From: Ministeria vibrans ATCC 50519 | Lineage: Eukaryota; Protista; Filasterea | Direction: 5' to 3' | NCBI GenBank assembly: GCA_943704425.1 | Contig: CALSCP010002175.1 | Location: 62,674-126,673 of the forward strand | Length of the DNA stretch: 64,000 nucleotides | Shown: positions 24,338 to 57,754 of the stretch, piece by piece | Position numbering within the stretch: position 1 is the stretch's first letter | How the letters are laid out: each line of letters opens with the position of its first letter | Program-made: the position numbers and the translations under genes | The notes under the pieces: model-generated | What the model saw: only the letters and a program-made list of their open reading frames with translations | The model's database searches: none | What the model was told of the DNA's origin: nothing

Positions 24338-24605
24338 ATGTCCAGCGCATTGGACGAGCAGCTGGCGACAGGCATCCGCGATGCGCTGAGCCGCTTAGGG
24401 TTGAAATTGATCATCGTGGCGCGCATCAAAAAGTCCGTCCTCGAACTGCTCACTGCCCTCAGCGAGCCTGCCTGCCACGCCGCCGTGGCGACAGCCTTTG
24501 TTGCCGAATGCAAGATGCTCACAGCGGGCACTCAGGACGCGTTTTTGAGCCTGATGCGCCGAGTCATTGACAACACCAAAGGCACCTCCTCAACAACAAC
24601 AACAT

Positions 24606-24647
<42 letters not shown>

Positions 24648-27600
24648 CTTCAGCCGCCTGCGCATCCTCTTCCCCTACTGTGCCGCCGCCCCCCATTTTG
24701 CCACGCCACCTCGACGGAACTGTCTTCAGAGTGACGCGCGACACGATTCAGTGCCGTGTCGACTACTCCTCGACGGAACAACGCAAGCATTTCCCTTCGG
24801 AGCTCTCTGCTCGCCTCAATCAAGCCGCCCAGCCATGGGGGTATGCCCTTCGCTCTGATGACAAGGTCCGCCTTGCAGTGGGACCAGCCAGAGGGCAGAC
24901 AAAGAAAATTTACGTCCATTCTGTCACTGTCACAAAGATCTCATCGCCCGTGCCTCGTCCGAGGGACATTTTGGTCGCCTTCGAGAACGACAATCCGACT
25001 CGCATTATTGAGATTCTTGCTGACGGCGGCGAAGCGGTTCTTGAGGCTCTGCTCACGCATGACTCGAGAGAGTGGATCAACACAACGCACCTTGCCCAAT
25101 TCATCCGTGCGTGTGAGGCCGCACTCTCGTGTCCCACTGCAAACTTGCAGATGACGCGTCGGCAAACGCTTGCCGCACTCATTGGCGACAGTGAATTTTT
25201 CACCGTTGCTCTCGTTCGTCTGGCACCCAAGCTCAGTTGCGCTCGCCTCCCGGTTCTCGAGCTTATGAAGCTTATGCGTCTCATTGTGCTCAGTGCGCCA
25301 CACCTCTCGCCCCACATTGTGTCTATGTGTCGCGCACTCAGCGTCAACCCCTTGGTGCGCCTTGATCCCAGTGCCATTCTCGACATCTTTGATCCGCTTG
25401 CCGACGAGTATGCGCGCAAGGACACGCGCGCACGCACACCGGCCTCCATTCACCGCCAACTCCAACAACAAGACTACACCAAACTCTCTCTGATCCCACA
25501 CGTTTCCGAACTACGCTGGCCCCTACCCCTTAACATGCTTCCCGACGCTCAAATTCACTATGAAAGCGCTCACACCATGCTCGACACACTCTTCAAGCTC
25601 TACCGTGCCGATGCCTTCCTCCAACTCCAAGCTCTCGTCGTGGAGCACATCAACAGCAAAAAAAGCACGCCTGCTTCGCCATCCAAGCGCGTAGGTACGG
25701 CTAGCACAAGTCGCAACTATGTGCACACGAACGTGCAGTTTGTCGGCTTTCATCAGACAGAGCGAGTCTACATGCACGCTCAACGCAACTGGAGTGTGCT
25801 ACTGCGTCTCGACCGCAAGCCGAGCTCCTCCTCCCTTATGTACGGCAACCTTCTTGCTGTGTCGCCCAACGGCTCTTTTGCGCAACACAACACTCTCTTT
25901 GTCGCCATTGAGCGTGATGACGACAAAGGCTCTTCCAAGAAGCTCCTCATTCGAGTGCGACTGCTGCAGACTCCCACCTCACCCGATGCGACCACTGCAT
26001 TGCTAATGCTAGCCCACAGTCCGTCGCTAACCTGCATTGAGAGCCCCGTCTTTTTCGTTGCCTTTGCCTCAGTCATGACTGCTCTTCAGCGTCTCTCCGA
26101 CACCTCGCTGCCGTTCCCCGACGATCTCGCTGCTCCAGCCAACCTACCCTCTACCGCATCTGCTCCTCCTGCATACGTCACTGAGCAAACAAACAACACC
26201 TGTGATTGGAGCATCATCTTTCCAGGTGCTTCCAAGGGTCCGTGCACGCCCAAGCACCTTGCCTTGTTGCGCACCTCCATGACCGCTTCCCACCTGGACG
26301 TGAGTCAACTTGAAGCTCTTGAACACATCCTCTCGCATCGCCTCGCGCTTGTTCAGGGGCCCCCTGGCACCGGCAAGAGCCGCCTTGCTTCTCACCTTGT
26401 TGCGTTGCTCCTTTCCAACCCTACGCAAGACCGTCCCATTGTGGTCATCACATACAAGAACAAGGCTCTCGATGACTTTTGTCTCTCCTGTATGGAACTT
26501 GCGGGTCTTTCTCCAGGCGAGCTTGTTCGTCTCGGTAGTCGCTCTCAAGACCCAAAGGTGAGGGATGGGGGATGATTGTTTTCGGCTCTTTCAGCTTACA
26601 TCACCACTTTGTACGACTTCAATAGATTGCCGAATGCAGTGCGTCGAAACTGTTGTGGAAAACGCTCACCCACGAGCAACGGAGCTCAGTGAAGCGACTT
26701 GAGGAACAACTGTCGCCGGACAATCTACCGCTTGAGGAGGAAGTAGAGAGGTCCATTGCGAAACTTGAAGACGCTCTGTCACTGGAGTGTGCGGTTGAGG
26801 CGTTGCTTGAGGTGTGGACGGACCGTGCGGAGCTAGTCAGCGAATTGATGGCGCTGGTGGAGCCGCCGTCGTCGTTGAGTGCATCAAAGAAGAGTAATAG
26901 AGGAGCGGTCGACTTGGACAAGAAGGAGACGTTGGAGATGCTCATTGCCGAGTTTCAGTCAATGGAGCCCGGGCAAATGCTCGATGTGGTGCGCGGGGAT
27001 GAACAGTCTCAAGTGAGAGGAAGTCTGAAAGAGCGTCGTTTTCTGATGCTCAACTGGCTCACCAAAGCAGTCGCTACGTGGCTCGATGTTGCACACTGCT
27101 CTGACGCTGCCACTGGCTTCCTCGATGACCAGACCGACGACACCGTTGCCAGTGCGCCTGACAGTGACATTTTGCACGATATCAATGACCTCGAGATGTC
27201 GCAGAACGAAGAGCGCTCGTCGACTGTGCACGAGCGTGTGGCGGCCACGAGCGAGTCGCTGGGCAACGACTTGACGAAGGAAAAGGGAAAGCGCGCAAAA
27301 GAGATGGACATAGGCGATGGTGTCGCGAAGGGACAGCCAGATGACTATCGACGTCCAGTGAGCGAGTCGGTCGAGTTGCTTACGCACGCCGTCCTGAGCG
27401 CCCTTCGTCTTGACGCTCAGCCGAACACCACAAGCACGGCCGACGGCGACGATGCCACTTTGTTGGCCTCCATGTCACCGTTAACGTCACTGTCACACCC
27501 ACGGAGCCTTGCGTCAAGCGCACCGGCCGAACGTCGCCTCTACCTCGGAGGTGTGCTTCTTGCCACAGGCCGAGTATCGCAGCTTTGCTCCCACATTAAG

Positions 27601-30208
27601 CGACAGCTTGCCACTGCTGACTCGCTGCACGCTCAGCTCATTGAGCAATATCAAGAGGCGCTCAAGTCGCTCTTGAGCCGTGCTCGCATTGTGGCCATGA
27701 CGACCACAGGTATGACAAGAGACTAATCCCAGCGCATCATTATATTATTTTTACTATTAGTATTAGTATTAGTATTATTATTACTTATTCTTATTATTCT
27801 TATTCTTATTCTTATTCTTGTCCTTATTCTTATTCTTATTATTATTATTATTATTATATTATTATATTATTTATGTTTTTCATGCTCCAACTTTTTTTTT
27901 TCTCTTTCTGCAGGCGCTGCCATTCACGATCGCCTTGTGCGGTCCATTGAAGGCCGTGTGCTTGTTGTGGAGGAGGCGGCGGAAATTTTGGAACCACAGT
28001 TGTTGGCGTGCCTTCACGAGCGGATTGAACACGTCATTCAGATTGGCGATCACTTGCAGTTGCAGCCAACGGTGAACACGCACCGTCTCAAGGTCGACAA
28101 GAAGTTTCGCTGGTCTCTCTTTGAGCGTCTCGTCAAGGCGAAGCGTCCCTTTGCCACCCTGCGCTTCCAAGGACGCCAGCTGCCCACTCTTGTGCCGCTG
28201 CTCCAGCAGGTGCACACTGGCTACAAAGGTCTCGAGTCCAACATGAACTCGGTCGCACACCTCAAGGCCATCAATTGTCTCTACCCTCAAGAGGCTCCTT
28301 TTACCTTTCTCGCTCATTCCAATCGATCACAGGCCATGTACAATGAGCACGAAGCATTCCTTGTCCTGCAGCTGCTCCACCTCCTTACGACTGGCTCGAA
28401 TCCCCCTGTCATCCTTAACAAAGTGACCGTTCTCGCTGGCTACGCTCGTCAGGTCTGTCGAGAAAGAGAAATAATCCGTGATGTTTTATAATAATTTATT
28501 ATTATTATTATTATTTTATCAAATTGATGTGACTTTGACCATTCTGTTATTATTAGTGTTATTGATGTGATTTTGGCCTTTATTATTATAATTTTTTATT
28601 ATTTATTATTATTATTATAATTATTATTATTATTATTGTAGACATTGATTGATGTGACTTTGATCATTCTGTAGGTTGAATTGTTGAAGAAGTTGTTGTC
28701 GAACCACGACATGTCGGAAGCGACAGTGATGACAGTCGACGCAGCCCAGGGTGCCGAGAACGACGTAGTGATTGTGTCGCTGGTGCGAAGCGCTGGTGCA
28801 GGGACGCCCATTGGGTTCATGAGCACAAACAATCGCATTGTGGTGCTGGCTTCGCGTGCGCGACGTGCTCTCTACCTGGTCGGCCACGGCGAAACATTTA
28901 AGTCTGCTCGCAAGTCTGTTTGGCCCAATCTCATCAAGTTTATGAGCACCAAATCAGCCGTGGTCTCCCAGCTTGACTACGTCTGTCCTGTACATGGGCG
29001 CACCAAGAACACCTTTTCACTCAAAGCAAACGGTATGATAATATAATAATTATTAGAATAATTAGAATTATATAATAATTATTAATGATATTTAAACAAC
29101 AATAAACAACCAAAGGTGCGTCTACCGGTCTTGACACTCTCTTTGTAGTGCCTCAACAGCAGCAGTGGAAACCACCTCTATTGTGCTGCGAACAAGTGAA
29201 GCTGAATTGCAAGCACACAGCTCTGTGTAGTGAAGCCACAGCCTCCTTGTTTGTCTGTCGCGACTGTATCAAACCCGTTATGACCGTACGAAAAGTGACA
29301 AAACCAAAATATTATTATGTTATTAATTATTTATTTATTTATTTTGGGGGGGACCTTGTTCTTTGTGATCTTTTCAGGGCAACAGAGTGCCGCCCTCTTA
29401 CTGGACAAGCATCAAGGCGAACAAGCGTCCCGATCATGGCAAAGAGTTTTTTGATGTAACAGACTCTATGCGACATTGCGTGGAGGACCTGATGAATGCG
29501 ACCGCCGAGCCCGCAACGCACGGCACCGGTGCCGACTCGCACAAGGAAATATTTATCAAGTTTAAGGTGCTCAAAGTGGAGCGGTGTGAAAACTGGCCGC
29601 TGTGGGAACGCTATGCACAGTATCGTCGACAGCGCCTGGAGGAGTTGGTTGGAGAGAGAGCTGTGCTGCGCGACGAATACGAAACGCAGCTGCAAAAGGG
29701 CATTTTGAAGACGCACGAAGTATTGACGGACGCCTGGCGCAGGGGAGATGATAAGATGCACAGCTTTTGCGAGTCTCGTGCGAACGAACATTTTTTGTTT
29801 CACGGGACGGATGCTGCCGCGAGCAACAACATTGGCAGTGGGGGTTTTATCGACAAGATTGGCAAAGGCATGTTCGGCGAAGGCTGTTACTTTGCCGAGC
29901 GATCGTCCAAGTCAGACCATTACACGGGGACTTCACCTCCTTACACTATGTTTGTCGCTCGCGTCACTCTGGGTCTCTACCACGAGCAGCTACATTCAGA
30001 CAACACTTTGAAAATGCCGCCTTGCTCTCGCCCGTACTGCCACGACTTCAAGTTGTGTGCGTCACAGCGTCACGTACGCCCTCACAGTGTCGTCTTTGTG
30101 GCTGGCCAGCGACCCCAATCCCATCCTGCTCGCTTCCGTGAGTTTATTGTGTACGACAAGGCGGCCGCCTACCCCGAGTATCGCGTGACCTACAAGAGGG
30201 TGACATGA
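24338..30208 (+). CDS. ZNFX1-like (Upf1-type SF1) helicase fused to a C-terminal PARP catalytic domain (H-Y-E)
   Basis: ZNFX1-like motifs LDTLFKLYRADAF, LMYGNLL, IESPVFF...ALQ...LPF, QGPPGTGKS, RLGSRS, MTTTG|AA, VVEEAAEILE, IGDHLQLQP, SLFERL, TVDAAQGAENDVVIVSLVRS and SRAR. In-frame GT-AG splicing through a small Cys exon (about 29116/29148-29285) reaches exon 29378-30208 with FLFHGT, GMFGEGCYFAERSSKSDHY, MFVARVTLG and FREFIVYD...YPEY. Confidence 0.88.
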
Positions 30209-30599
30209 AAGTGACATATTGAATGAAACCCAATGCAAACCCAAGCAAGGGTGAAATACTTTCAAAAAGCTTAACCGTATTTAGTGACTAGCTATGGCTA
30301 GCTAGGGGTAAGATGATAAAACAGTGACAGGAATCCCATTATATTAATGGAGTCACAGAAGGAAAAGTAAAATATAAATAATTTTATTGATCTTTTCGAA
30401 TTTCGCCGCAACAGAGGTAAGCCCGCCTCAGACGAACCCCAAATCTCCAAAGAATGAAGCGCCCATATAGATCCACAAAAAATAAATCAAAATAATTAAT
30501 TAAAATAATTATTTAGATTTTAGAATAAGTCAAATTATTTCGTCCTCTTCCTTTTTTGTCGCCCCCCCTTAGTGTACCTCCCCGCTCGAAGAGGAGAGC

Positions 30600-35696: not shown

Positions 35697-37390
35697 ATGT
35701 CTGAACCGACTGGTGAGACGTCCAAGCGTCCCAAGGGTAAGGATATTTTGCGTACAGGAAATGGGTTTCTCTTTCTGACTCTCTCTTTCCCTCTCTCTCC
35801 TCTCTCCTCCCGTCTGATTCTTGGCGGGTGCAGACACGGCGTTCCGCCAGCAGCGGCTGCCGGCCTGGCACCCCTTAATAACGCCCAAGTCGGTCATTCC
35901 CGTGTTTCTTCTTGTCGCAGTCGTCTTTGTGCCCCTCGGCATCGGCATGCTCGTCACCACCAACGCCGTATGTGCCATTCCCCTCCCCCTTGACCCCTCC
36001 ACTCTCTCCATTTCGTCGTCTGTGTTGTGTTGGCGCAAAAGGGGAATTTTTTTTTCTGTCGTTTTGATGTTTTAAAAATATCCTCAACACAAAAGAGACT
36101 GAAGTGAGTGTCTATTCTGCAGCTGTCCGAGTACTCTTTCGACTATACCAACTGTGCGGCGCTCGAGGGAGGCGGTACGTGTGCATCGCAGGTAAGAACA
36201 GATTCTTTAGAATCAACCTTCAAACTGACACACAATCTACACAATATTTACACTATCACTTTGCTTCTCTCTCTCTATCACTCTCTCAAACTCTCAAACT
36301 CACACACACACACACACACTCACTCACTTTGTTTCTAAACCCTCCCCTCTCTTTTTCATACGCACAGGTCGCAATGGGCTTTCAAAACTGCACCTGTAAC
36401 ATCACCGTCACTATTCCCAAGACACTCGACGGCACCGTCTACATGTATTATGGCCTGACCAACTTTTACCAGGTACAAAAAGGGTTTTGTCTTGGTTTGT
36501 CATCATTTTCACCTTTCTTCTTCTTCTGTAGAACCACCGTCGCTACGTCAAGTCACGCGACGACGTTCAACTGAACGGCGCTCTTGCAGCCGCTAAGACG
36601 TGTGACCCTCTGACAAGTGCCGGCGGAGCGCCTTACGCGCCCTGTGGACTTATCGCCAACAGCATGTTTAACGGTACGAAACGACTGTGCACACTGCTTG
36701 CTTCTTACGTTACTTGCGTAGACACCCTCCGCCTTGTTCCAGCACTGGGCGGCCCGCCGATCTTCCAGAAGAGCACGGGGATTGCGTGGACGAGCGACGT
36801 TGACACCAAGTTCAACAACCCGCCGCCCAGCAGCAACCTGACGCTCGCCTTTGCCGGCTCCCTCCAGCCGCCCAACTGGCCCTTCTCGCCCGCCGAAATT
36901 GGCAACACCGCCGGGCACCCCAACGGCCCTGGCTTCAAGAACGAGGACTTTATTGTGTGGATGCGTGTGGCGGCTCTCCCCAACTTCCGCAAGCTTTACC
37001 GCATTCAAGAGAACGGTCTGCAGGCCGGCGACTACTTTCTCCTTGTAGACTACAGTACGCGCGCAAAAAATTCTCTCTCGTGTGTGTATGTGTCTTTGTG
37101 TGTGTGTGTGTCTTTGTGTGTCTTTGTGGTGCGTGTGTTTGTGTGTGACTGACCAGTGTGTGTGTGTGTGTGTTATGTGTTGCGTAGACTTCCCTGCGCT
37201 CAACTTTGAAGGCACCAAGTCGATGATTGTGACGCAGAGCAGTTGGATTGGCGGCAAAAGTGCATTTCTGGGCGTTGCGTACATTGTTGTTGGTGCTATA
37301 TGTCTGCTCATTGGCGCCTTCTTCATCCTCCTCAACCGCATCAAGCCCCGCGCTCTTGGCGATCCCGCCCTCCTCAAGTGGTCCTACTGA
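35697..37390 (+). CDS. CDC50: CDC50/LEM3 family P4-ATPase (flippase) beta subunit
   Basis: TAFRQQRLPAWHP, YYGLTNFYQ|NHRRYVKSRDDVQL, PCGLIANSMFN|DT, GIAWTSD, NEDFIVWMRVAALPNFRKLY, SWIGGK and two TM helices. Confidence 0.96.
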
Positions 37391-37512
37391 TCCTCTCTTT
37401 TTGTTTTTCGAAAATGAACGATTGTATTTTCTTTTCAGTACTATTACTTTTTAAAACGAACAAACATCACAATAACAGTACATTTTCATTTGGGTTTTTA
37501 TTATTTTGTCTC

Positions 37513-38275
37513 ATGTCCTCCCAACGAATCCTCACCCTCCAACAACACCTTACTCCTTTCTCCATGTCTGCCGCAAGCACTGCCGACCTCTCTAAAATCA
37601 ACAATCTCTCCAACGCAGATGCACAATTGTGCTTTGAACAGTACGCCAAAAACCATCACTCCACGCTCCTGTGTCTATCCCGCGTCTCCTATCCTCGCAG
37701 AGTATGTGCCAGCCAGGTATGGGCCTCGAGTATGGTACATCAACGTCCATTTGCCTCTCTAGCGGCGCTCATCGACACCGCCGAGCTTCTCTGGTTCGAA
37801 ACGTACGCGAAACACCGTTCGCAGCTGCTCACAGCCATCGCTGCGCACGGCACACTCGGCCAGGCGGTTGCTGAACAGCGTGATGCTGTCAATCATGCCC
37901 ACGACGGCGATCTAGCGACGCTACGTCAAGCAAATGAGCAATACGAGACGCGACACGGTCACAAGTGCATTGTGTTTGCGTCGGGTCTCACTGTGCCCGC
38001 CATGATCAGTGCCGTCCGCTCACGACTTGGCAACTCTGTCGACACTGAGTTTGATCTATGTGCTCAACAGGTAGGCACACGCGCGCACCACAAAGACATA
38101 CACACACACCACAAAGACATACACACCACAAAGACACACACACCACAGAGACATACGCACACACCACAAAGACACACTCACACACCACAAAGACACACAC
38201 ACACCACAAAGACATACACACACGCACCACAAAGACATACACACACACCACAAAGACATAAACACACACCACAAA

Positions 38276-38326
<51 letters not shown>

Positions 38327-38953
38327 TCGTAAATGCATACATACGCACACACCCGTACACTAACAGACTCACCCACCTGCACAAAACGCACCTCATTCAA
38401 TTTGGATGTGTAGGTGAGTTTTATCAATGTCCTGCGATTATGCACCCTTGTCCAAGTGGACGCCCTCTCGCTCTCCACTGCTCCAACGTCATCACACAAG
38501 AACGGCCGCTCGCCTATCACATCACACGTTCTCGACACGTCACTGGGTCGTCCCGCAGCACATTTGCCTATTCAACTGCAGCGCAATATTTCCGGCACTT
38601 TTGTTCCCATTGCTCAACACTCTACCGACTCCGACGGACGTGTATCCGCCTTTTACCCTCCCTTCTACGCTGCCCTCTTTCAAACAGGTGCGTTTCCAAA
38701 AAAAAATATATATATACAATACAATACCATGTTCTGGGGTGTCTGGGGGAGAAGGAGAAAGCTCATTGTCACTTCTCTGCGTTTAGGTTCGTTTCGTCTG
38801 CGTTTCGATACCAACGTCTACTTTTCACGACTGTCCCTGTCTGCGTTTTACCCACATGTTACGATTGATTTCGTCGTGGCCAATGCCAGTGAGCACTACC
38901 ACGTGCCACTGCTGCTCAATCCCTACGGCTACTCGACCTATCGCGGAAGCTGA
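37513..38953 (+). CDS. Bifunctional OHCU decarboxylase / 5-hydroxyisourate hydrolase (transthyretin-like) with N-terminal PTS2
   Basis: WASSMVHQRPFAS...NEQYETRHGH (decarboxylase). SPITSHVLDTSLGRPA...TDSDGR...HYHVPLLLNPYGYSTYRGS* (HIUase with YRGS C-terminus). N-terminal RILTLQQHL fits R-[LI]-x5-H-L. Confidence 0.92.
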
Positions 38954-39073: not shown

Positions 39074-43286
<4,213 letters not shown>

Positions 43287-55266: not shown

Positions 55267-56142
55267 ATGACCCTCGACACACCCGCATCTCCCATCGCCG
55301 AGGACACCCCCGACGACCTGTGTTTCGACGCGCACTTGTTGGGAGAGCGCAGTTTCTCGGCCGACCAGCTCATTGGAGAGTGTCGTCGTCGCCATGTCAC
55401 TCTGCCCGTGCTACGCGACGACCTGCACACGTACGCACGCACCCTGCGCTCCGAGCTGGTCGCGCTCATCAACCGAGACTACGCCGACTACGTCAACCTC
55501 AGTGGCAACCTTGTGGGCGTCGACAAGGCCATTGGCGAGCTTCGCAGACCGCTCGACGATTTGCGCCACAGCGTCACCGCCGTACGCGACGACATGCTCC
55601 ACACCACCGAAACAGTCGATGCGCTACTCAGGGAGCGCACCGAGCTCCGCGAAAAGTCCACCATTCTCCAAAATTTCCTCAATCTGTCCATGTCCGTCGA
55701 CAAGATTGAAGCGCTCCTCAGCATTGGCGATGCTGCCGGCGCCAACGTCGCCGGTGCTGCGCCCACCCTTGCCGGATCAGACTCATCGCGGCTCATGGAA
55801 CGCGTTGCGAGCGAGTTCAACCAACTGAGCTTCTTCCAGGGCCAGTGTGGCAACGTACCGTTTGTGCGCGAAATCCATCCACGTATCACACGCATTGAGG
55901 ACACTCTCCTGCAAGGACTCGAGACGGCGTTTCTGGCGGGCCTTGACAGCGCTTCCGAGGCTGCCTTGCACCAGTGTTTGAGCACGTACGCCATCATTGA
56001 TCGCGCCGAGGAGGCCGAACGGGTGTTTCGTACCGCGCGTGTACGCCCCTTTGTTGACGCCCTCATCAACGAAGTGACCGCCTCCTCAGATCAAAAACGC
56101 GGCGGTGGTAGTGCAGCGAAACAACAACAACAACAACAACAA

Positions 56143-56173
<31 letters not shown>

Positions 56174-57754
56174 CGGTGTCGTTGTCTTCGACCGGGCGTC
56201 TTGCGCGTGGTGTCACCCTAGAGAGCCTCTATACGCGTCTGCTGGAATTTGTCCCGTCGCAGTGCACACAGCTGTTGCGCTGTGCCACCTCTAATTTCAA
56301 CTTTCTCACGCAATCGGTCTTTCCAGAGTTTGTCGAAGCCCTCGACAAGCGTCTCGGCAGCATCTTCCTGCCTGGCAATCCCGACGTGTTCCACGCCAAC
56401 TACGTCTGCAGCATGGAGTTCCTCTCGGCCTTTGAGCGTCTCCTCCCGTCCCTCTCCGCCGTCCGCGATCTCCGTGCCCTTGATGCCTTCCAACACTTTG
56501 ACAAGCGCTGGAGCCTTCCAGTCTACTTCCAACTGCGTGTTCAAGAGATTGCAGCACTTTTTGAATCCGCATCGGTGGCATCAGCACAGCTCACTACCGA
56601 CAACGATGTTAACAAAAACAAGCATCCACACCAGCTCGTTCTTGCCGCCTCGCACGCCCTCACTACCGCTCTCTCCCGCTGCTGGCATTCCTCTGTCTTC
56701 CTCCAGCCTCTTGCCCCTCGCTTTTGGAAGCTCACCCTCCAACTGCTTGCTCGCTATGCCCTGTGGGCACACGACATGGCTCGCCAACAAGACAACTCTG
56801 TATCAGACCACTTTCCCAATGTGTACACTGATTTTCACTCACACTTACTTGGTAATGTTATTGTAGGAATCCCAGTTGGTATTGTGTATGCTAATTGCGC
56901 AGGACATTGCGATTCTGCGCAAGACTGTTGTCCCCTCGTTCTTCCAACGCGAAGTCATCGTGCGTGTTTTATCAGAGGACAGCACAGCAGCAGCCGCCAA
57001 CGCAACGGTTGTGTATGCGATGGAAACGGCACTGCGCGACTCTGATGAGGCACTGGCGCAGGCGGCGGGTGTCTGTGTGGAGCATACCAATACTGAGCTG
57101 AGACGCCAGTGCATTATGCGACTGACGGGCACTACCTCCACCTCCACCACAGACACAACATCCATGAGCGGCAGTGGCGGCGCACGCGCCGTCAAGAGCA
57201 TGTACCGCATGACTGGCAAGGGTGCCCCCACCACCTCTTGCTCATACGCGGCGTCGATCCTCGCTTCCCCCGTTGCCGTCCTTGTCCGTGCCGTCCGTCT
57301 CCCCTATCCCTCTGCTTCCTCTCTCGTCGAATCCTCTCTCATCTCTATTGTCAATGACACTGCCAAAAAGTATCGGAACCGTCTTTCTTTTCTCTTTCGA
57401 GCGATGACCGCACACTAAGAGTCATGTCTTTGCGTTTAGATTTGAGGAAATTGTAGTGGAGGAAATGGCGACAGTGCGCAAAACGGAAGACAGTCTGGCG
57501 CGCATGAAAAAGGTCAAATCAGTGGTAAGACAACAAAGGGAGAAACTGGCTGTGCAACGAGGTAGATTCTGATTCGTCTGTTGTATATGTATGATATTTA
57601 GAGCACAGTTTCGGGCACGCTGAGTGACTTGGAGAAGATCCAACAGCAGTTCCGATTGGACGTGAGTGCGTTTGTGGCACAGGCGCAGTCTGAGTGTGGT
57701 GTGGACACAGCGCAGTGTGCGCATGTCAGGGCACTTCAAACGACAGTTGCCTGA
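55267..57754 (+). CDS. COG2: Conserved oligomeric Golgi complex subunit 2
   Basis: LCFD...LRDDL...LRSELVALINRDYADYVNLS, IFLPGNPDVFHANY, RWSLPVYFQLR, FWKLTLQLLARY, MYRMT, RKTEDSLARMKK and LSDLEKIQQQFRLDV. Confidence 0.95.

What the first reader, a model, noticed from the sequence alone, without database searches (positions are those of the whole stretch)
24338..30208. ZNFX1-like RNA helicase fused to a PARP effector
Seen: a full ZNFX1-type SF1 motif set joined by phase-compatible introns to an H-Y-E PARP. The NF-X1 finger array typical of ZNFX1 is reduced to a short Cys-rich linker. The N-terminus has a beta-rich, possibly OB-like segment. Some motifs deviate from consensus (TYKNKALDDF, TVDAAQGAE). 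Established: ZNFX1-family helicases act in antiviral RNA sensing and small-RNA inheritance. Inference: an intracellular RNA sensor that switches on ADP-ribosylation.
Basis: partly seen in the sequence, partly recalled or inferred. Interest (0 to 1): 0.85.

Follow-up and report, generated by a model that had tools for sequence, protein, structure and literature searches.

The report
ZNFX1-family RNA helicase ending in PARP
This is one six-exon gene for a 1,725-residue protein that joins a ZNFX1-type RNA helicase to an apparently active ADP-ribosyltransferase (PARP) domain; the same combination occurs uncharacterised in many animals, plants and protists, and I found no paper that describes it.

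Summary
Window 24338-30208 (+) reads as six exons joined by five GT-AG introns that keep the frame (5,178 nt, 1,725 codons). Four introns are AT-rich (GC 0.20-0.27, against 0.49-0.57 in exons).

- **Helicase:** each helicase exon, searched on its own, has human ZNFX1 (PDB 9q9z) as its best solved relative. The matches are collinear and about 4-13 orders of magnitude better than UPF1, Aquarius or Sen1.
- **PARP:** the last exon is a PARP catalytic domain (Pfam 64 bits) with H-Y-E intact.
- **Fusion:** I obtained no RNA data. However, 39 of the 70 long proteins closest to exon 1 carry C-terminal PARP domains. Three that I checked are single uninterrupted ORFs, and five match the window's exons in order.
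- **Already in databases:** 117 proteins share such a PARP tail. Named ones come from horseshoe crabs, cnidarians, a flatworm, brine shrimp, conifers and a moss. No paper I could find describes the combination.
- **What differs here:** the zinc-finger stalk is about 100 residues with 7 Cys, against a median of 252 residues and 25 Cys. There is one PARP domain, not two, and no detectable cold-shock domain. The PARP groups with this genome's own PARP paralogues, though not decisively.

That RNA binding activates ADP-ribosylation is an inference from human ZNFX1 and is untested. This scan noted the same stretch once before (s1-763962).

The parts
24338..26557 (+). Exon 1 (740 codons). Holds the N-terminal region, an ARM-like helical region, the 1B beta-barrel, and the start of RecA lobe 1 with Walker A and motif Ia.
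   Evidence: phmmer residues 405-737 match ZNFX1 9q9z_A 446-772 (E 7.7e-12). The AF2 model's best Foldseek hit is the ZNFX1 core (E 2.5e-12).
24704..24880 (+). Beta-rich segment (residues 123-181). It lies where relatives carry one to three cold-shock domains. Its fold is not established.
   Evidence: AF2 strands with pLDDT 52-74. Folded alone, pLDDT 57. hhalign against the relatives' cold-shock domains is not significant. No Pfam hit.
24995..25663 (+). All-helical region (residues 220-442). It occupies the position of the armadillo-type domain of ZNFX1.
   Evidence: AF2 helices H220-H442. The family profile aligns with the ZNFX1 ARM region. Equivalence for this gene is an inference.
25709..25972 (+). 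1B beta-barrel, the Pfam 'ZNFX1 domain' region (residues 458-545).
   Evidence: PF25396 scores 19.7 bits, E 8.9e-4, below the cut-off of 27. AF2 strands 462-543 have pLDDT about 80-94.
26357..26380 (+). Walker A motif, GPPGTGKS.
   Evidence: Q673 and G674-K680 are invariant in the alignment of 41 family members, except T678 (90% or more).
26558..26625 (+). Intron 1 (68 nt, phase 0, GT-AG).
26626..27709 (+). Exon 2. Encodes the long 1C insertion of RecA lobe 1, with an acidic stretch (DSDILHDINDLEMSQNEE) that is a candidate counterpart of the ZNFX1 plug helix. Ends in the MTTT motif.
   Evidence: weak collinear match to the family's 1C region. No direct PDB hit. The plug-helix reading is an inference.
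27710..27913 (+). Intron 2 (204 nt, phase 1, GC 0.21). It splits the MTTTGAA motif.
27914..28452 (+). Exon 3. Holds motif II (VVEEAAE, 27964-27984), motif III and the first part of RecA lobe 2.
   Evidence: matches ZNFX1 residues 1083-1233 (E 2.2e-18), against Aquarius at 1.9e-5. Pfam AAA_11 and AAA_12.
28453..28674 (+). Intron 3 (222 nt, phase 0, GC 0.20).
28675..29032 (+). Exon 4. Holds motif V (28732-28764), motif VI (28843-28884) and the CPVH start of the finger remnant.
   Evidence: matches ZNFX1 residues 1254-1359 (E 5.7e-11), against Sen1 at 6.9e-7. Pfam AAA_12, 56 bits.
29033..29148 (+). Intron 4 (116 nt, phase 1, GC 0.24).
29149..29294 (+). Exon 5. A Cys-rich linker (6 Cys, 1 His), the remnant of the NFX1-type zinc-finger stalk.
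   Evidence: No Pfam hit, even at E 10.
29295..29377 (+). Intron 5 (83 nt, phase 0, GC 0.27). A donor at 29286 is an in-frame alternative.
29378..30208 (+). Exon 6. Encodes the whole PARP catalytic domain and the stop codon. H is at 29801-29803, Y at 29888-29890, E at 30140-30142. A Cys/His-rich loop insert lies at 30017-30085.
   Evidence: PF00644 at 64.1 bits. Best solved relative is tankyrase-2 (E 5.8e-11). Triad confirmed by alignment.

Best explanation
**What it is (shown by sequence and comparison).** One gene of six exons encodes a 1,725-residue protein. Its order of parts is:
- an N-terminal beta-rich segment;
- an armadillo-like helical region;
- a UPF1-like SF1 helicase of the ZNFX1 family, with a 1B barrel and a long 1C insertion;
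- a short Cys-rich remnant of the zinc-finger stalk;
- one PARP catalytic domain with H-Y-E intact.

The PARP stands where human ZNFX1 has its Miz/RZ ubiquitin-ligase module.

**How it probably works (inferred from human ZNFX1).**
- The helicase is the sensing and motor part.
- Binding of single-stranded or structured RNA in the groove between the two RecA lobes relieves an inhibited state.
- The enzyme may also cluster on RNA.
- This brings the PARP domain to ADP-ribosylate itself, bound proteins or possibly the RNA.

The likeliest role is defence against RNA viruses or selfish RNAs.
For: **Gene model.** Five GT-AG introns keep the frame. Splicing restores the MTTTGAA motif.

**ZNFX1 family.**
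- Exons 1, 3 and 4 each have 9q9z_A as their best hit, collinearly (E 7.7e-12, 2.2e-18, 5.7e-11). The next families score 6e-5, 1.9e-5 and 6.9e-7.
- The AF2 model of exon 1 matches the ZNFX1 core (Foldseek E 2.5e-12).
- The profile of the relatives matches ZNFX1 at E 9e-266, against UPF1 at 1.5e-62.

**PARP.** 64 bits, with H, Y and E aligned to those of tankyrase.

**Fusion.**
- 39 of the 70 long proteins closest to exon 1 carry PARP domains.
- Pfam gives AAA_11-AAA_12-PARP for all five relatives tested, with the ZNFX1 domain in four.
- P0043, P0017 and P0022 are single uninterrupted ORFs.
- Five relatives match exons 1, 3, 4 and 6 in order.
- Only 345 nt separate exon 4 from exon 6.
- The conserved PPSYW start of the PARP domain has no upstream ATG in its frame, which opens only at 29369.

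**Position in the family.** A tree of the exon-1 region puts this gene inside the PARP-bearing group.

**Copy number.** This is the only ZNFX1-like gene in the 29.7-Mb assembly.

**Mechanism by analogy.** In human ZNFX1 an acidic plug helix in 1C blocks the RNA groove and RNA displaces it. The C-terminal module is the catalytic effector (10.1101/2025.10.14.682297; PMC13710534).
Against:
- **No biochemistry.** Nothing here shows RNA dependence of the PARP.
- **The stalk is almost gone.** Human ZNFX1 needs its zinc-finger stalk for function, so the coupling geometry must differ.
- **Helicase departures.** Two family-conserved positions are changed: H to K in motif Ia, and the aromatic residue of motif V to A.
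- **Divergence.** Exon 1 sits on a very long branch (2.44 changes per column), and residues 1-375 have no detectable relatives.
- **Weak 1C match.** Exon 2 aligns with the family's 1C region only weakly and not with any solved structure. The plug helix is therefore conjecture.
- **A defence role is not shown.** ZNFX1 relatives in C. elegans and S. pombe work in small-RNA pathways.
Confidence: 0.6

Rival explanations
1. Two genes lie head to tail. A ZNFX1-like helicase gene ends after exon 4 (a retained intron 4 gives a stop at 29044-29046), and a small PARP-only gene begins in exon 6.
For: There are no transcript data. The exon 6 frame has an internal ATG about 28 codons in, which a prokaryotic gene caller used on a near-identical contig (P0001). 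This genome also has PARP domains in other contexts.
Against: - Only 345 nt lie between exon 4 and exon 6. They contain a coding-like Cys-rich exon flanked by AT-rich GT-AG introns in matching phase.
- A start at the internal ATG would cut off the conserved N-terminal part of the domain, which is shared with own-genome paralogues and P0043 from residue 2-3.
- Dozens of relatives carry helicase and PARP in one ORF.
Confidence: 0.07
2. The fusion is real but serves RNA housekeeping rather than sensing of foreign RNA. Possible roles are granule assembly, transcript surveillance or transposon silencing, as for C. elegans ZNFX-1 or S. pombe Hrr1. The PARP would supply poly(ADP-ribose) as a condensate scaffold.
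For: - ZNFX1 relatives act in small-RNA inheritance and RNAi (cited in 10.1101/2025.10.14.682297).
- An H-Y-E triad is compatible with polymer synthesis.
- The divergently transcribed neighbour (22732-24141, minus strand) begins with a long RGG/GGR-rich tract. From general knowledge, such tracts often bind RNA and poly(ADP-ribose).
Against: - No Piwi/Argonaute and no RdRP match was found in the assembly. These are weak negatives in a draft genome, and the RdRP search had no positive control.
- The gene lies in a region rich in lineage-specific PARP and macro-domain genes, and its N-terminus evolves fast. From general knowledge, this pattern is more usual for conflict genes.
- 6 of the 7 exon-6 differences from a second isolate change the protein. 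The numbers are small.
Confidence: 0.25
3. One of the two enzymes is a pseudo-enzyme. Either the helicase only binds RNA, or the PARP only binds NAD+ or ADP-ribose, so there is no catalytic coupling.
For: Motif Ia has K for a nearly invariant H, and motif V lacks the family's aromatic residue. The second PARP domain of most relatives is much more divergent than the first. First-stage notes report pseudo-PARPs elsewhere in this genome; I did not check them.
Against: Walker A, motif II (EE), motif VI arginines and the H-Y-E triad are all intact. No exon has a stop or frameshift. The triad is also kept in the second isolate.
Confidence: 0.08

Closest known systems
Human ZNFX1 (NFX1-type zinc finger-containing protein 1; PDB 9q9z)
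   Same: UPF1-like SF1 helicase core with a 1B barrel, an expanded 1C insertion and an N-terminal helical domain. It is the best solved relative of every helicase exon. Both proteins follow the same overall logic of a helicase followed by a C-terminal catalytic module.
   Different: Human ZNFX1 has twelve NFX1-type zinc fingers and a Miz plus RZ-finger ubiquitin-ligase module. This gene has about one finger's worth of Cys/His and a PARP domain instead, with no RZ or NFX1 finger hit. Identity is only about 20-35%.
Uncharacterised ZNFX1-like helicase-PARP proteins in public databases
   Same: Same order of parts: ZNFX1 domain, AAA_11, AAA_12, then PARP with H-Y-E in the first PARP domain. The exon-1 tree places the window gene in this group. 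Examples: Limulus polyphemus LOC106460493; 'NFX1-type zinc finger-containing protein 1-like' of Tachypleus tridentatus, Rhopilema esculentum and Xenia sp.; proteins of Macrostomum lignano, Artemia franciscana, Cryptomeria japonica, Taxus chinensis and Ceratodon purpureus.
   Different: - Most have one to three N-terminal cold-shock domains, a stalk of about 250 residues with about 25 Cys, and two PARP domains in tandem.
- The window gene has none of these and shares at most 33-38% identity.
- Its PARP domain falls outside the clade of 32 helicase-linked PARPs in the best tree (100/100), beside paralogues of its own genome. The AU test does not reject the alternative (p 0.216).
Tankyrase-1/2 catalytic domain
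   Same: Closest solved PARP catalytic domain (E 5.8e-11). H-Y-E is aligned, and the helices before the catalytic core also match.
   Different: There are no ankyrin repeats and no SAM domain. The tankyrase zinc site (CPVH...CYIC, before the LLFCRVTLG strand) has no counterpart. Instead a Cys/His-rich insert sits later in the domain.
RNA-binding antiviral PARPs of vertebrates (ZAP/PARP13, PARP12, PARP14)
   Same: An RNA-recognition part is joined to a C-terminal PARP-type domain. The PxxW start of the catalytic domain resembles that group, which I state from memory. PARP14, PARP10, PARP12 and PARP15 are the next-best solved hits after tankyrase.
   Different: Those proteins read RNA with CCCH fingers, KH or macro domains, not with an ATP-driven helicase. 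ZAP is catalytically dead and the others are H-Y-I/L mono-transferases. The triad here is H-Y-E.
C. elegans ZNFX-1 and S. pombe Hrr1
   Same: Members of the same helicase family without the vertebrate RZ finger. They show that the C-terminal module varies within the family (10.1101/2025.10.14.682297).
   Different: They act with Argonaute and RdRP pathways. No Piwi or RdRP match was found in this assembly. They have no PARP.

Membership tests
ZNFX1 family of SF1 helicases | UPF1-like SF1 helicase core with motifs I, Ia, II, III, V and VI, closer to ZNFX1 than to UPF1, Aquarius, Sen1 or IGHMBP2. | tested here: met
   9q9z_A is the best hit for all three helicase exons, by about 4-13 orders of magnitude. 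Motifs located.
ZNFX1 family of SF1 helicases | ZNFX1-type 1B barrel (Pfam PF25396, 'ZNFX1 domain'). | tested here: inconclusive
   PF25396 scores 19.7 bits, below the cut-off of 27. However, a confident AF2 barrel at residues 462-543 and a phmmer alignment to ZNFX1 residues 446-772 cover it.
ZNFX1 family of SF1 helicases | Expanded 1C insertion in RecA lobe 1, with an acidic plug helix. | tested here: inconclusive
   A 361-codon insertion (exon 2) lies at the right place and contains an acidic stretch. Similarity is only weak to the family profile and absent to the PDB.
ZNFX1 family of SF1 helicases | N-terminal armadillo-type helical domain. | tested here: inconclusive
   AF2 predicts an all-helical region at residues 220-442, pLDDT mostly 53-94. 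There is no sequence match before about residue 375.
ZNFX1 proper (vertebrate type) | Array of NFX1-type zinc fingers forming a stalk. | tested here: not met
   The linker is about 102 residues with 7 Cys and 3 His, with no Pfam finger hit.
ZNFX1 proper (vertebrate type) | C-terminal E3 ubiquitin-ligase module (Miz-like domain and RZ finger). | tested here: not met
   The C-terminus is a PARP domain. Pfam found nothing in exon 5, even at E 10, and only PARP in exon 6 at E up to 0.1.
PARP (ARTD) family | PARP catalytic fold (Pfam PF00644 above its gathering score). | tested here: met
   64.1 bits against a cut-off of 26.7. 72 solved PARP chains match at E up to 0.01.
PARP (ARTD) family | H-Y-E catalytic triad. 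| tested here: met
   H142, Y171 and E255 of exon 6 align with the tankyrase-2 triad and with the relatives.
PARP (ARTD) family | NAD+-dependent ADP-ribosyl transfer (mono or poly). | not testable with these tools
   Needs an enzyme assay.
Tankyrases | Ankyrin-repeat clusters and a SAM domain before the catalytic domain, and a zinc site within it. | tested here: not met
   No Ank or SAM hits in any exon. The zinc-site residues are not aligned.
ZNFX1-like helicase-PARP proteins (database architecture) | Helicase and PARP in one polypeptide, in that order. | tested here: inconclusive
   The splice model is phase-compatible and collinear with five single-ORF relatives. No transcript data exist for this organism.
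ZNFX1-like helicase-PARP proteins (database architecture) | N-terminal cold-shock domain(s) and tandem PARP domains, as in most members. | tested here: not met
   There is one PARP domain only. Cold-shock domain not detected.

The most novel reading that the evidence does not exclude
Helicase-PARP proteins of the ZNFX1 family may be RNA-activated writers that put ADP-ribose on the bound RNA itself, or on viral ribonucleoproteins. This would be the ADP-ribose counterpart of the RNA ubiquitination recently reported for human ZNFX1. On this reading the ZNFX1 helicase is an ancient, exchangeable sensing chassis on which eukaryotes have more than once mounted different modifying enzymes. In this lineage it took a PARP from a locally expanded PARP family.
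Probability: 0.12. Interest if true: 0.85.

Novelty: new variant of a known kind. Interest (0 to 1): 0.6.

Why it matters
Human ZNFX1 has only recently been shown to couple an auto-inhibited RNA helicase to a C-terminal ubiquitin-ligase module, and its loss causes severe immunodeficiency.

A widespread natural version has a PARP domain in place of the ligase. That suggests a modular rule, one RNA-sensing motor with interchangeable modifying enzymes. It also links two branches of antiviral biology, ZNFX1 and the antiviral PARPs.

The gene described here is a compact form with almost no stalk and a single PARP domain. It comes from a small genome, probably of a unicellular opisthokont related to animals. 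Its small size could make it a convenient protein for testing whether RNA binding switches on ADP-ribosylation.

The claim is limited. The architecture was already visible in databases, and nothing about its activity is shown here.

Tried and rejected
- **The 99%-identical public contig (L001).** It is collinear with the genome, intron included, so it is DNA and says nothing about splicing.
- **Joined protein.** Every exon was searched separately by reference. The full-length protein was therefore never compared as a whole.
- **OB or cold-shock fold of the N-terminus.** No Pfam hit at E 10. hhalign against the relatives' cold-shock domains gave probability 2.5%. The single-sequence AF2 model had pLDDT 57, too poor for a fold search. 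The fold remains undecided.
- **Exon 2 against the PDB.** No hit.
- **Origin of the PARP module.**
  - The quick tree separated it from the helicase-linked PARPs. Its AU test was unusable because the free search was poor.
  - The careful tree again grouped it with own-genome paralogues.
  - The AU test did not reject a single clade with the helicase-linked PARPs (p 0.216). I therefore do not claim an independent fusion or a module swap.
- **Protein Atlas search with relative P0017.** It gave only generic SF1 helicase clusters and no useful taxa.
- **Literature.** Seven full-text searches and a PARP survey (PMC4245714) gave no description of a ZNFX1-PARP or SF1 helicase-PARP fusion. Blasi et al. 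2022 on metazoan ZNFX1 helicases is not held, so prior description cannot be excluded.
- **Tankyrase membership.** Rejected (no ankyrin repeats, SAM domain or zinc site).
- **Species.** The organism could not be named.

Full report
**1. What is in the sequence**

Between 24338 and 30208 on the + strand, six open stretches follow one another in three different frames. They can be joined by five GT-AG introns: 26558-26625, 27710-27913, 28453-28674, 29033-29148 and 29295-29377. The intron phases are 0, 1, 0, 1, 0.

The resulting coding sequence is 5,178 nt (1,725 codons plus stop), with no internal stop in any exon. Four of the introns have GC 0.20-0.27 and the first has 0.46, against 0.49-0.57 in the exons. 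They end in pyrimidine-rich tracts.

Intron 2 cuts through a helicase signature. Exon 2 ends in MTTT plus one base, and exon 3 supplies the rest of a Gly codon followed by AA. This rebuilds MTTTGAA, which is exactly what human ZNFX1 has at that place. A chance arrangement of unrelated reading frames would not be expected to do this.

I did not build, search or fold the joined protein. Each exon was searched by reference.

**2. The helicase belongs to the ZNFX1 family**

- **Pfam.** AAA_11 and AAA_12 are found in exons 1, 3 and 4. There is also a sub-threshold hit to the 'ZNFX1 domain' PF25396 (19.7 bits, cut-off 27).
- **Solved structures.** Exons 1, 3 and 4 each have human ZNFX1 (9q9z_A) as best hit, in the right order:

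| Exon | Residues matched in 9q9z_A | E-value | Next family | Its E-value |
|---|---|---|---|---|
| 1 | 446-772 | 7.7e-12 | UPF1/NAM7 | 6e-5 |
| 3 | 1083-1233 | 2.2e-18 | Aquarius | 1.9e-5 |
| 4 | 1254-1359 | 5.7e-11 | Sen1 | 6.9e-7 |

- **Predicted structure.** An AlphaFold2 model of exon 1 was built with 40 relatives (mean pLDDT 70.9).
  - It has a confident beta-barrel at residues 462-543 (the 1B insertion), followed by the first RecA lobe.
  - Its best Foldseek match is the ZNFX1 helicase core (E 2.5e-12).
- **Motifs.** Walker A, motif II (EEAAE, as in ZNFX1), motif III, motif V and the arginines of motif VI are present.
  - Two real departures remain: K replaces a nearly invariant H in motif Ia, and the aromatic residue of motif V is lost.
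- **Exon 2.** Its 361 codons lie where ZNFX1 has its long 1C insertion.
  - It matches the family profile only weakly and no solved structure.
  - It contains an acidic stretch that could correspond to the ZNFX1 plug helix. That is an inference.

**3. The PARP domain**

Exon 6 alone encodes a complete PARP catalytic domain. Pfam PF00644 scores 64.1 bits against a cut-off of 26.7. The best solved relative is tankyrase-2 (E 5.8e-11), followed by PARP14, PARP10, PARP12 and PARP15.

H142, Y171 and E255, counted within exon 6, align with the catalytic triad. The protein is not a tankyrase. It has no ankyrin repeats or SAM domain, and the tankyrase zinc site has no counterpart. A Cys/His-rich insert sits later in the domain instead.

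**4. Is the fusion real?**

The only near-identical public contig is genomic. The case is therefore comparative, but it is strong.

- A search of 1.84 billion representative proteins with exon 1 found no close orthologue. The best hit has 33% identity, and only residues from about 375 to 740 match.
- Of the 150 best hits, 43 carry PARP domains at the C-terminus. Of the 70 that are at least 1,400 residues long, 39 do. This was measured with a PARP profile built locally.
- Pfam on five of them gives AAA_11-AAA_12-PARP, with the ZNFX1 domain in four. One has a cold-shock domain above the cut-off, another has one below it, and all but P0043 have two C-terminal PARP domains.
- P0043, P0017 and P0022 are single uninterrupted ORFs on their contigs, with gene length equal to three times the protein length plus the stop codon.
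- Five such proteins match window exons 1, 3, 4 and 6 in order by tblastn.
- Only 345 nt separate exon 4 from exon 6. The reading frame of exon 6 opens only at 29369 and has no ATG before the conserved PPSYW start of the domain.

I put the probability of one transcript at about 0.9.

**5. The architecture is already in public databases**

A search with the tail of relative P0017 returned 117 proteins at E up to 1e-10. Nearly all combine AAA_11 or AAA_12 with PARP, and more than half also carry the ZNFX1 domain.

Named entries come from:
- chelicerates: Tachypleus tridentatus and Limulus polyphemus;
- cnidarians: Rhopilema esculentum and Xenia sp.;
- a flatworm (Macrostomum lignano) and a crustacean (Artemia franciscana);
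- conifers: Cryptomeria japonica and Taxus chinensis;
- a moss: Ceratodon purpureus.

Two EukProt entries have identifiers that look like Ginkgo and Euglena. That reading of the identifiers is mine.

The profile of these relatives matches human ZNFX1 at E 9e-266, against UPF1 at 1.5e-62. The match covers the ARM domain, the helicase and the fingers. They are true ZNFX1-family members whose E3 module is replaced by PARP.

The databases call them 'NFX1-type zinc finger-containing protein 1-like', 'uncharacterized protein' or 'Poly [ADP-ribose] polymerase'. I found no paper that describes the combination. One relevant paper on metazoan ZNFX1 helicases is not held.

**6. How this gene differs from its relatives**

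- **Stalk.** The stretch between motif VI and the PARP domain is about 102 residues with 7 Cys and 3 His. In 26 relatives the median is 252 residues and 25 Cys.
- **PARP number.** It has one PARP domain, whereas most relatives have two.
- **Cold-shock domains.** Here only a beta-rich segment is predicted at residues 123-181, at low confidence. No test identified its fold.
- **Position of the helicase.** In a tree of the exon-1 region the gene lies in the PARP-bearing group (38 of 45 rows carry PARP). The other group of 20 has none. The gene sits on a long branch, and the split has only moderate support (SH-aLRT 82).
- **Position of the PARP.** In a careful tree of PARP domains, exon 6 groups with paralogues of its own genome.
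  - These include the PARP of the neighbouring receptor gene (96/73).
  - It is separated from 32 helicase-linked PARP domains by a branch with 100/100 support.
  - An AU test does not reject a tree in which exon 6 joins them (6.8 log-likelihood units worse, p 0.216).
  - Whether the PARP was inherited with the helicase or replaced from the local family stays open.

**7. Genome and neighbourhood**

The assembly has 29.7 Mb in 2,860 contigs. A COG2 gene in the window is most like animal COG2 (36-39% identity), and next most like chytrid and mucoromycete proteins. The upstream neighbour has Kelch and EGF repeats. The organism is therefore probably a unicellular opisthokont near animals. This is an inference, and I could not name it.

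- This is the only ZNFX1-like gene in the assembly.
- The assembly gives at least 17 PARP matches. Several lie in this window, together with a macro domain at 535-1006 on the minus strand.
- No Piwi/Argonaute or RdRP match was found. This is a weak negative, and the RdRP search had no positive control.
- Against a second isolate (L001), exon 6 has seven substitutions. Six change the protein, four of them in or next to the Cys/His insert, and none touches the triad. The numbers are too small for a selection test.

**8. Most likely mechanism**

Shown: the protein has a ZNFX1-type helicase with catalytic motifs in place, and a PARP domain with its triad intact, in one reading frame after splicing.

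Inferred, from the human enzyme (bioRxiv 10.1101/2025.10.14.682297; PMC13710534):
- Human ZNFX1 is a 5'-3' RNA helicase held inactive by an acidic helix of the 1C insertion that sits in the RNA groove.
- RNA displaces this helix.
- The protein polymerises.
- Its C-terminal Miz/RZ module ubiquitinates targets, reportedly including RNA.

I propose the same logic here with a different output. RNA binding opens and clusters the helicase, and the PARP domain then ADP-ribosylates itself, bound proteins or the RNA. The near absence of the stalk means the PARP must sit close to RecA lobe 2, so the geometry differs from the human enzyme.

A defence role is the likeliest, but a role in RNA granules or surveillance is a serious rival. 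I give the architecture about 0.9, the RNA-gated ADP-ribosylation model about 0.4, and the combined statement 0.6.

**9. Verdict**

This is a new, compact variant of an uncharacterised but widespread ZNFX1-PARP class. It is not a one-off invention of this genome. Interest is moderate to high. The main reasons are that ZNFX1's own effector chemistry has only just been worked out, and that this natural effector exchange makes the sensor-effector coupling directly testable.

Noticed in passing
window 18621-22304 (+): The upstream neighbour is a long gene with Kelch and at least six EGF repeats (Pfam). Its 3' exons (about 21228-22286) encode a PARP domain related to exon 6, ending in REFIVFD...YPEYYLEYKRE. 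In the PARP tree it is among the closest relatives of exon 6.
   Followed up: partly
window 22432-22767 (+): Just downstream of that gene lies what looks like a decayed second copy of its last PARP exon. The residues resemble the end of the domain, but the catalytic E context is lost.
   Followed up: no
window 22732-24141 (-): A 469-residue ORF is transcribed divergently from the helicase-PARP gene, with start codons 196 bp apart. Its N-terminus is a long Ser/Gly/Arg (RGG-type) tract. It has no Pfam hit. It could be a co-regulated partner that binds RNA or poly(ADP-ribose), but this was not tested.
   Followed up: no
window 535-1006 (-): Macro domain (ADP-ribose reader or eraser) matches lie at the left edge of the window: PF01661, E 6e-16 and 3.4e-4, in two pieces. 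They may be 3' exons of the gene whose large ORF is at 1064-2401 (-).
   Followed up: no
window 39693-40109 (-) and 5249-5440 (-): Further PARP-like pieces lie in the same window (C2175:102366-102782; tblastn E 5.6e-4). The region is unusually rich in ADP-ribosylation genes. The large ORFs at 2947-3993, 5887-7164, 10263-11306 and 13871-15136 gave no Pfam hit at E 0.001.
   Followed up: partly
L001 (public contig, 99.1% identical to window 29291-30404): A second isolate differs in exon 6 at seven positions. Six change the protein: I58R, H138R, H206R, S207P, N209K and Y220H. Four of them cluster in or next to the Cys/His-rich insert.
   Followed up: yes
whole assembly G000: No Piwi/Argonaute (PF02171) and no RdRP (PF05183) match was found in the 29.7-Mb draft assembly. 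The PARP family gives at least 17 matches, several inside long ORFs.
   Followed up: partly
window 55267-57045 (+) and 37243-38868 (+): Ordinary genes. COG2 (both Pfam domains) has its best hits in animals at 36-39% identity. The second ORF carries an OHCU decarboxylase domain.
   Followed up: yes
relatives P0025, P0188, P0061 and others: Many ZNFX1-like helicase-PARP proteins carry two or three N-terminal cold-shock-like domains in tandem. One relative (P0245) also carries a ubiquitin domain (PF00240), and some Artemia relatives carry dsRBD or C2H2 fingers.
   Followed up: no
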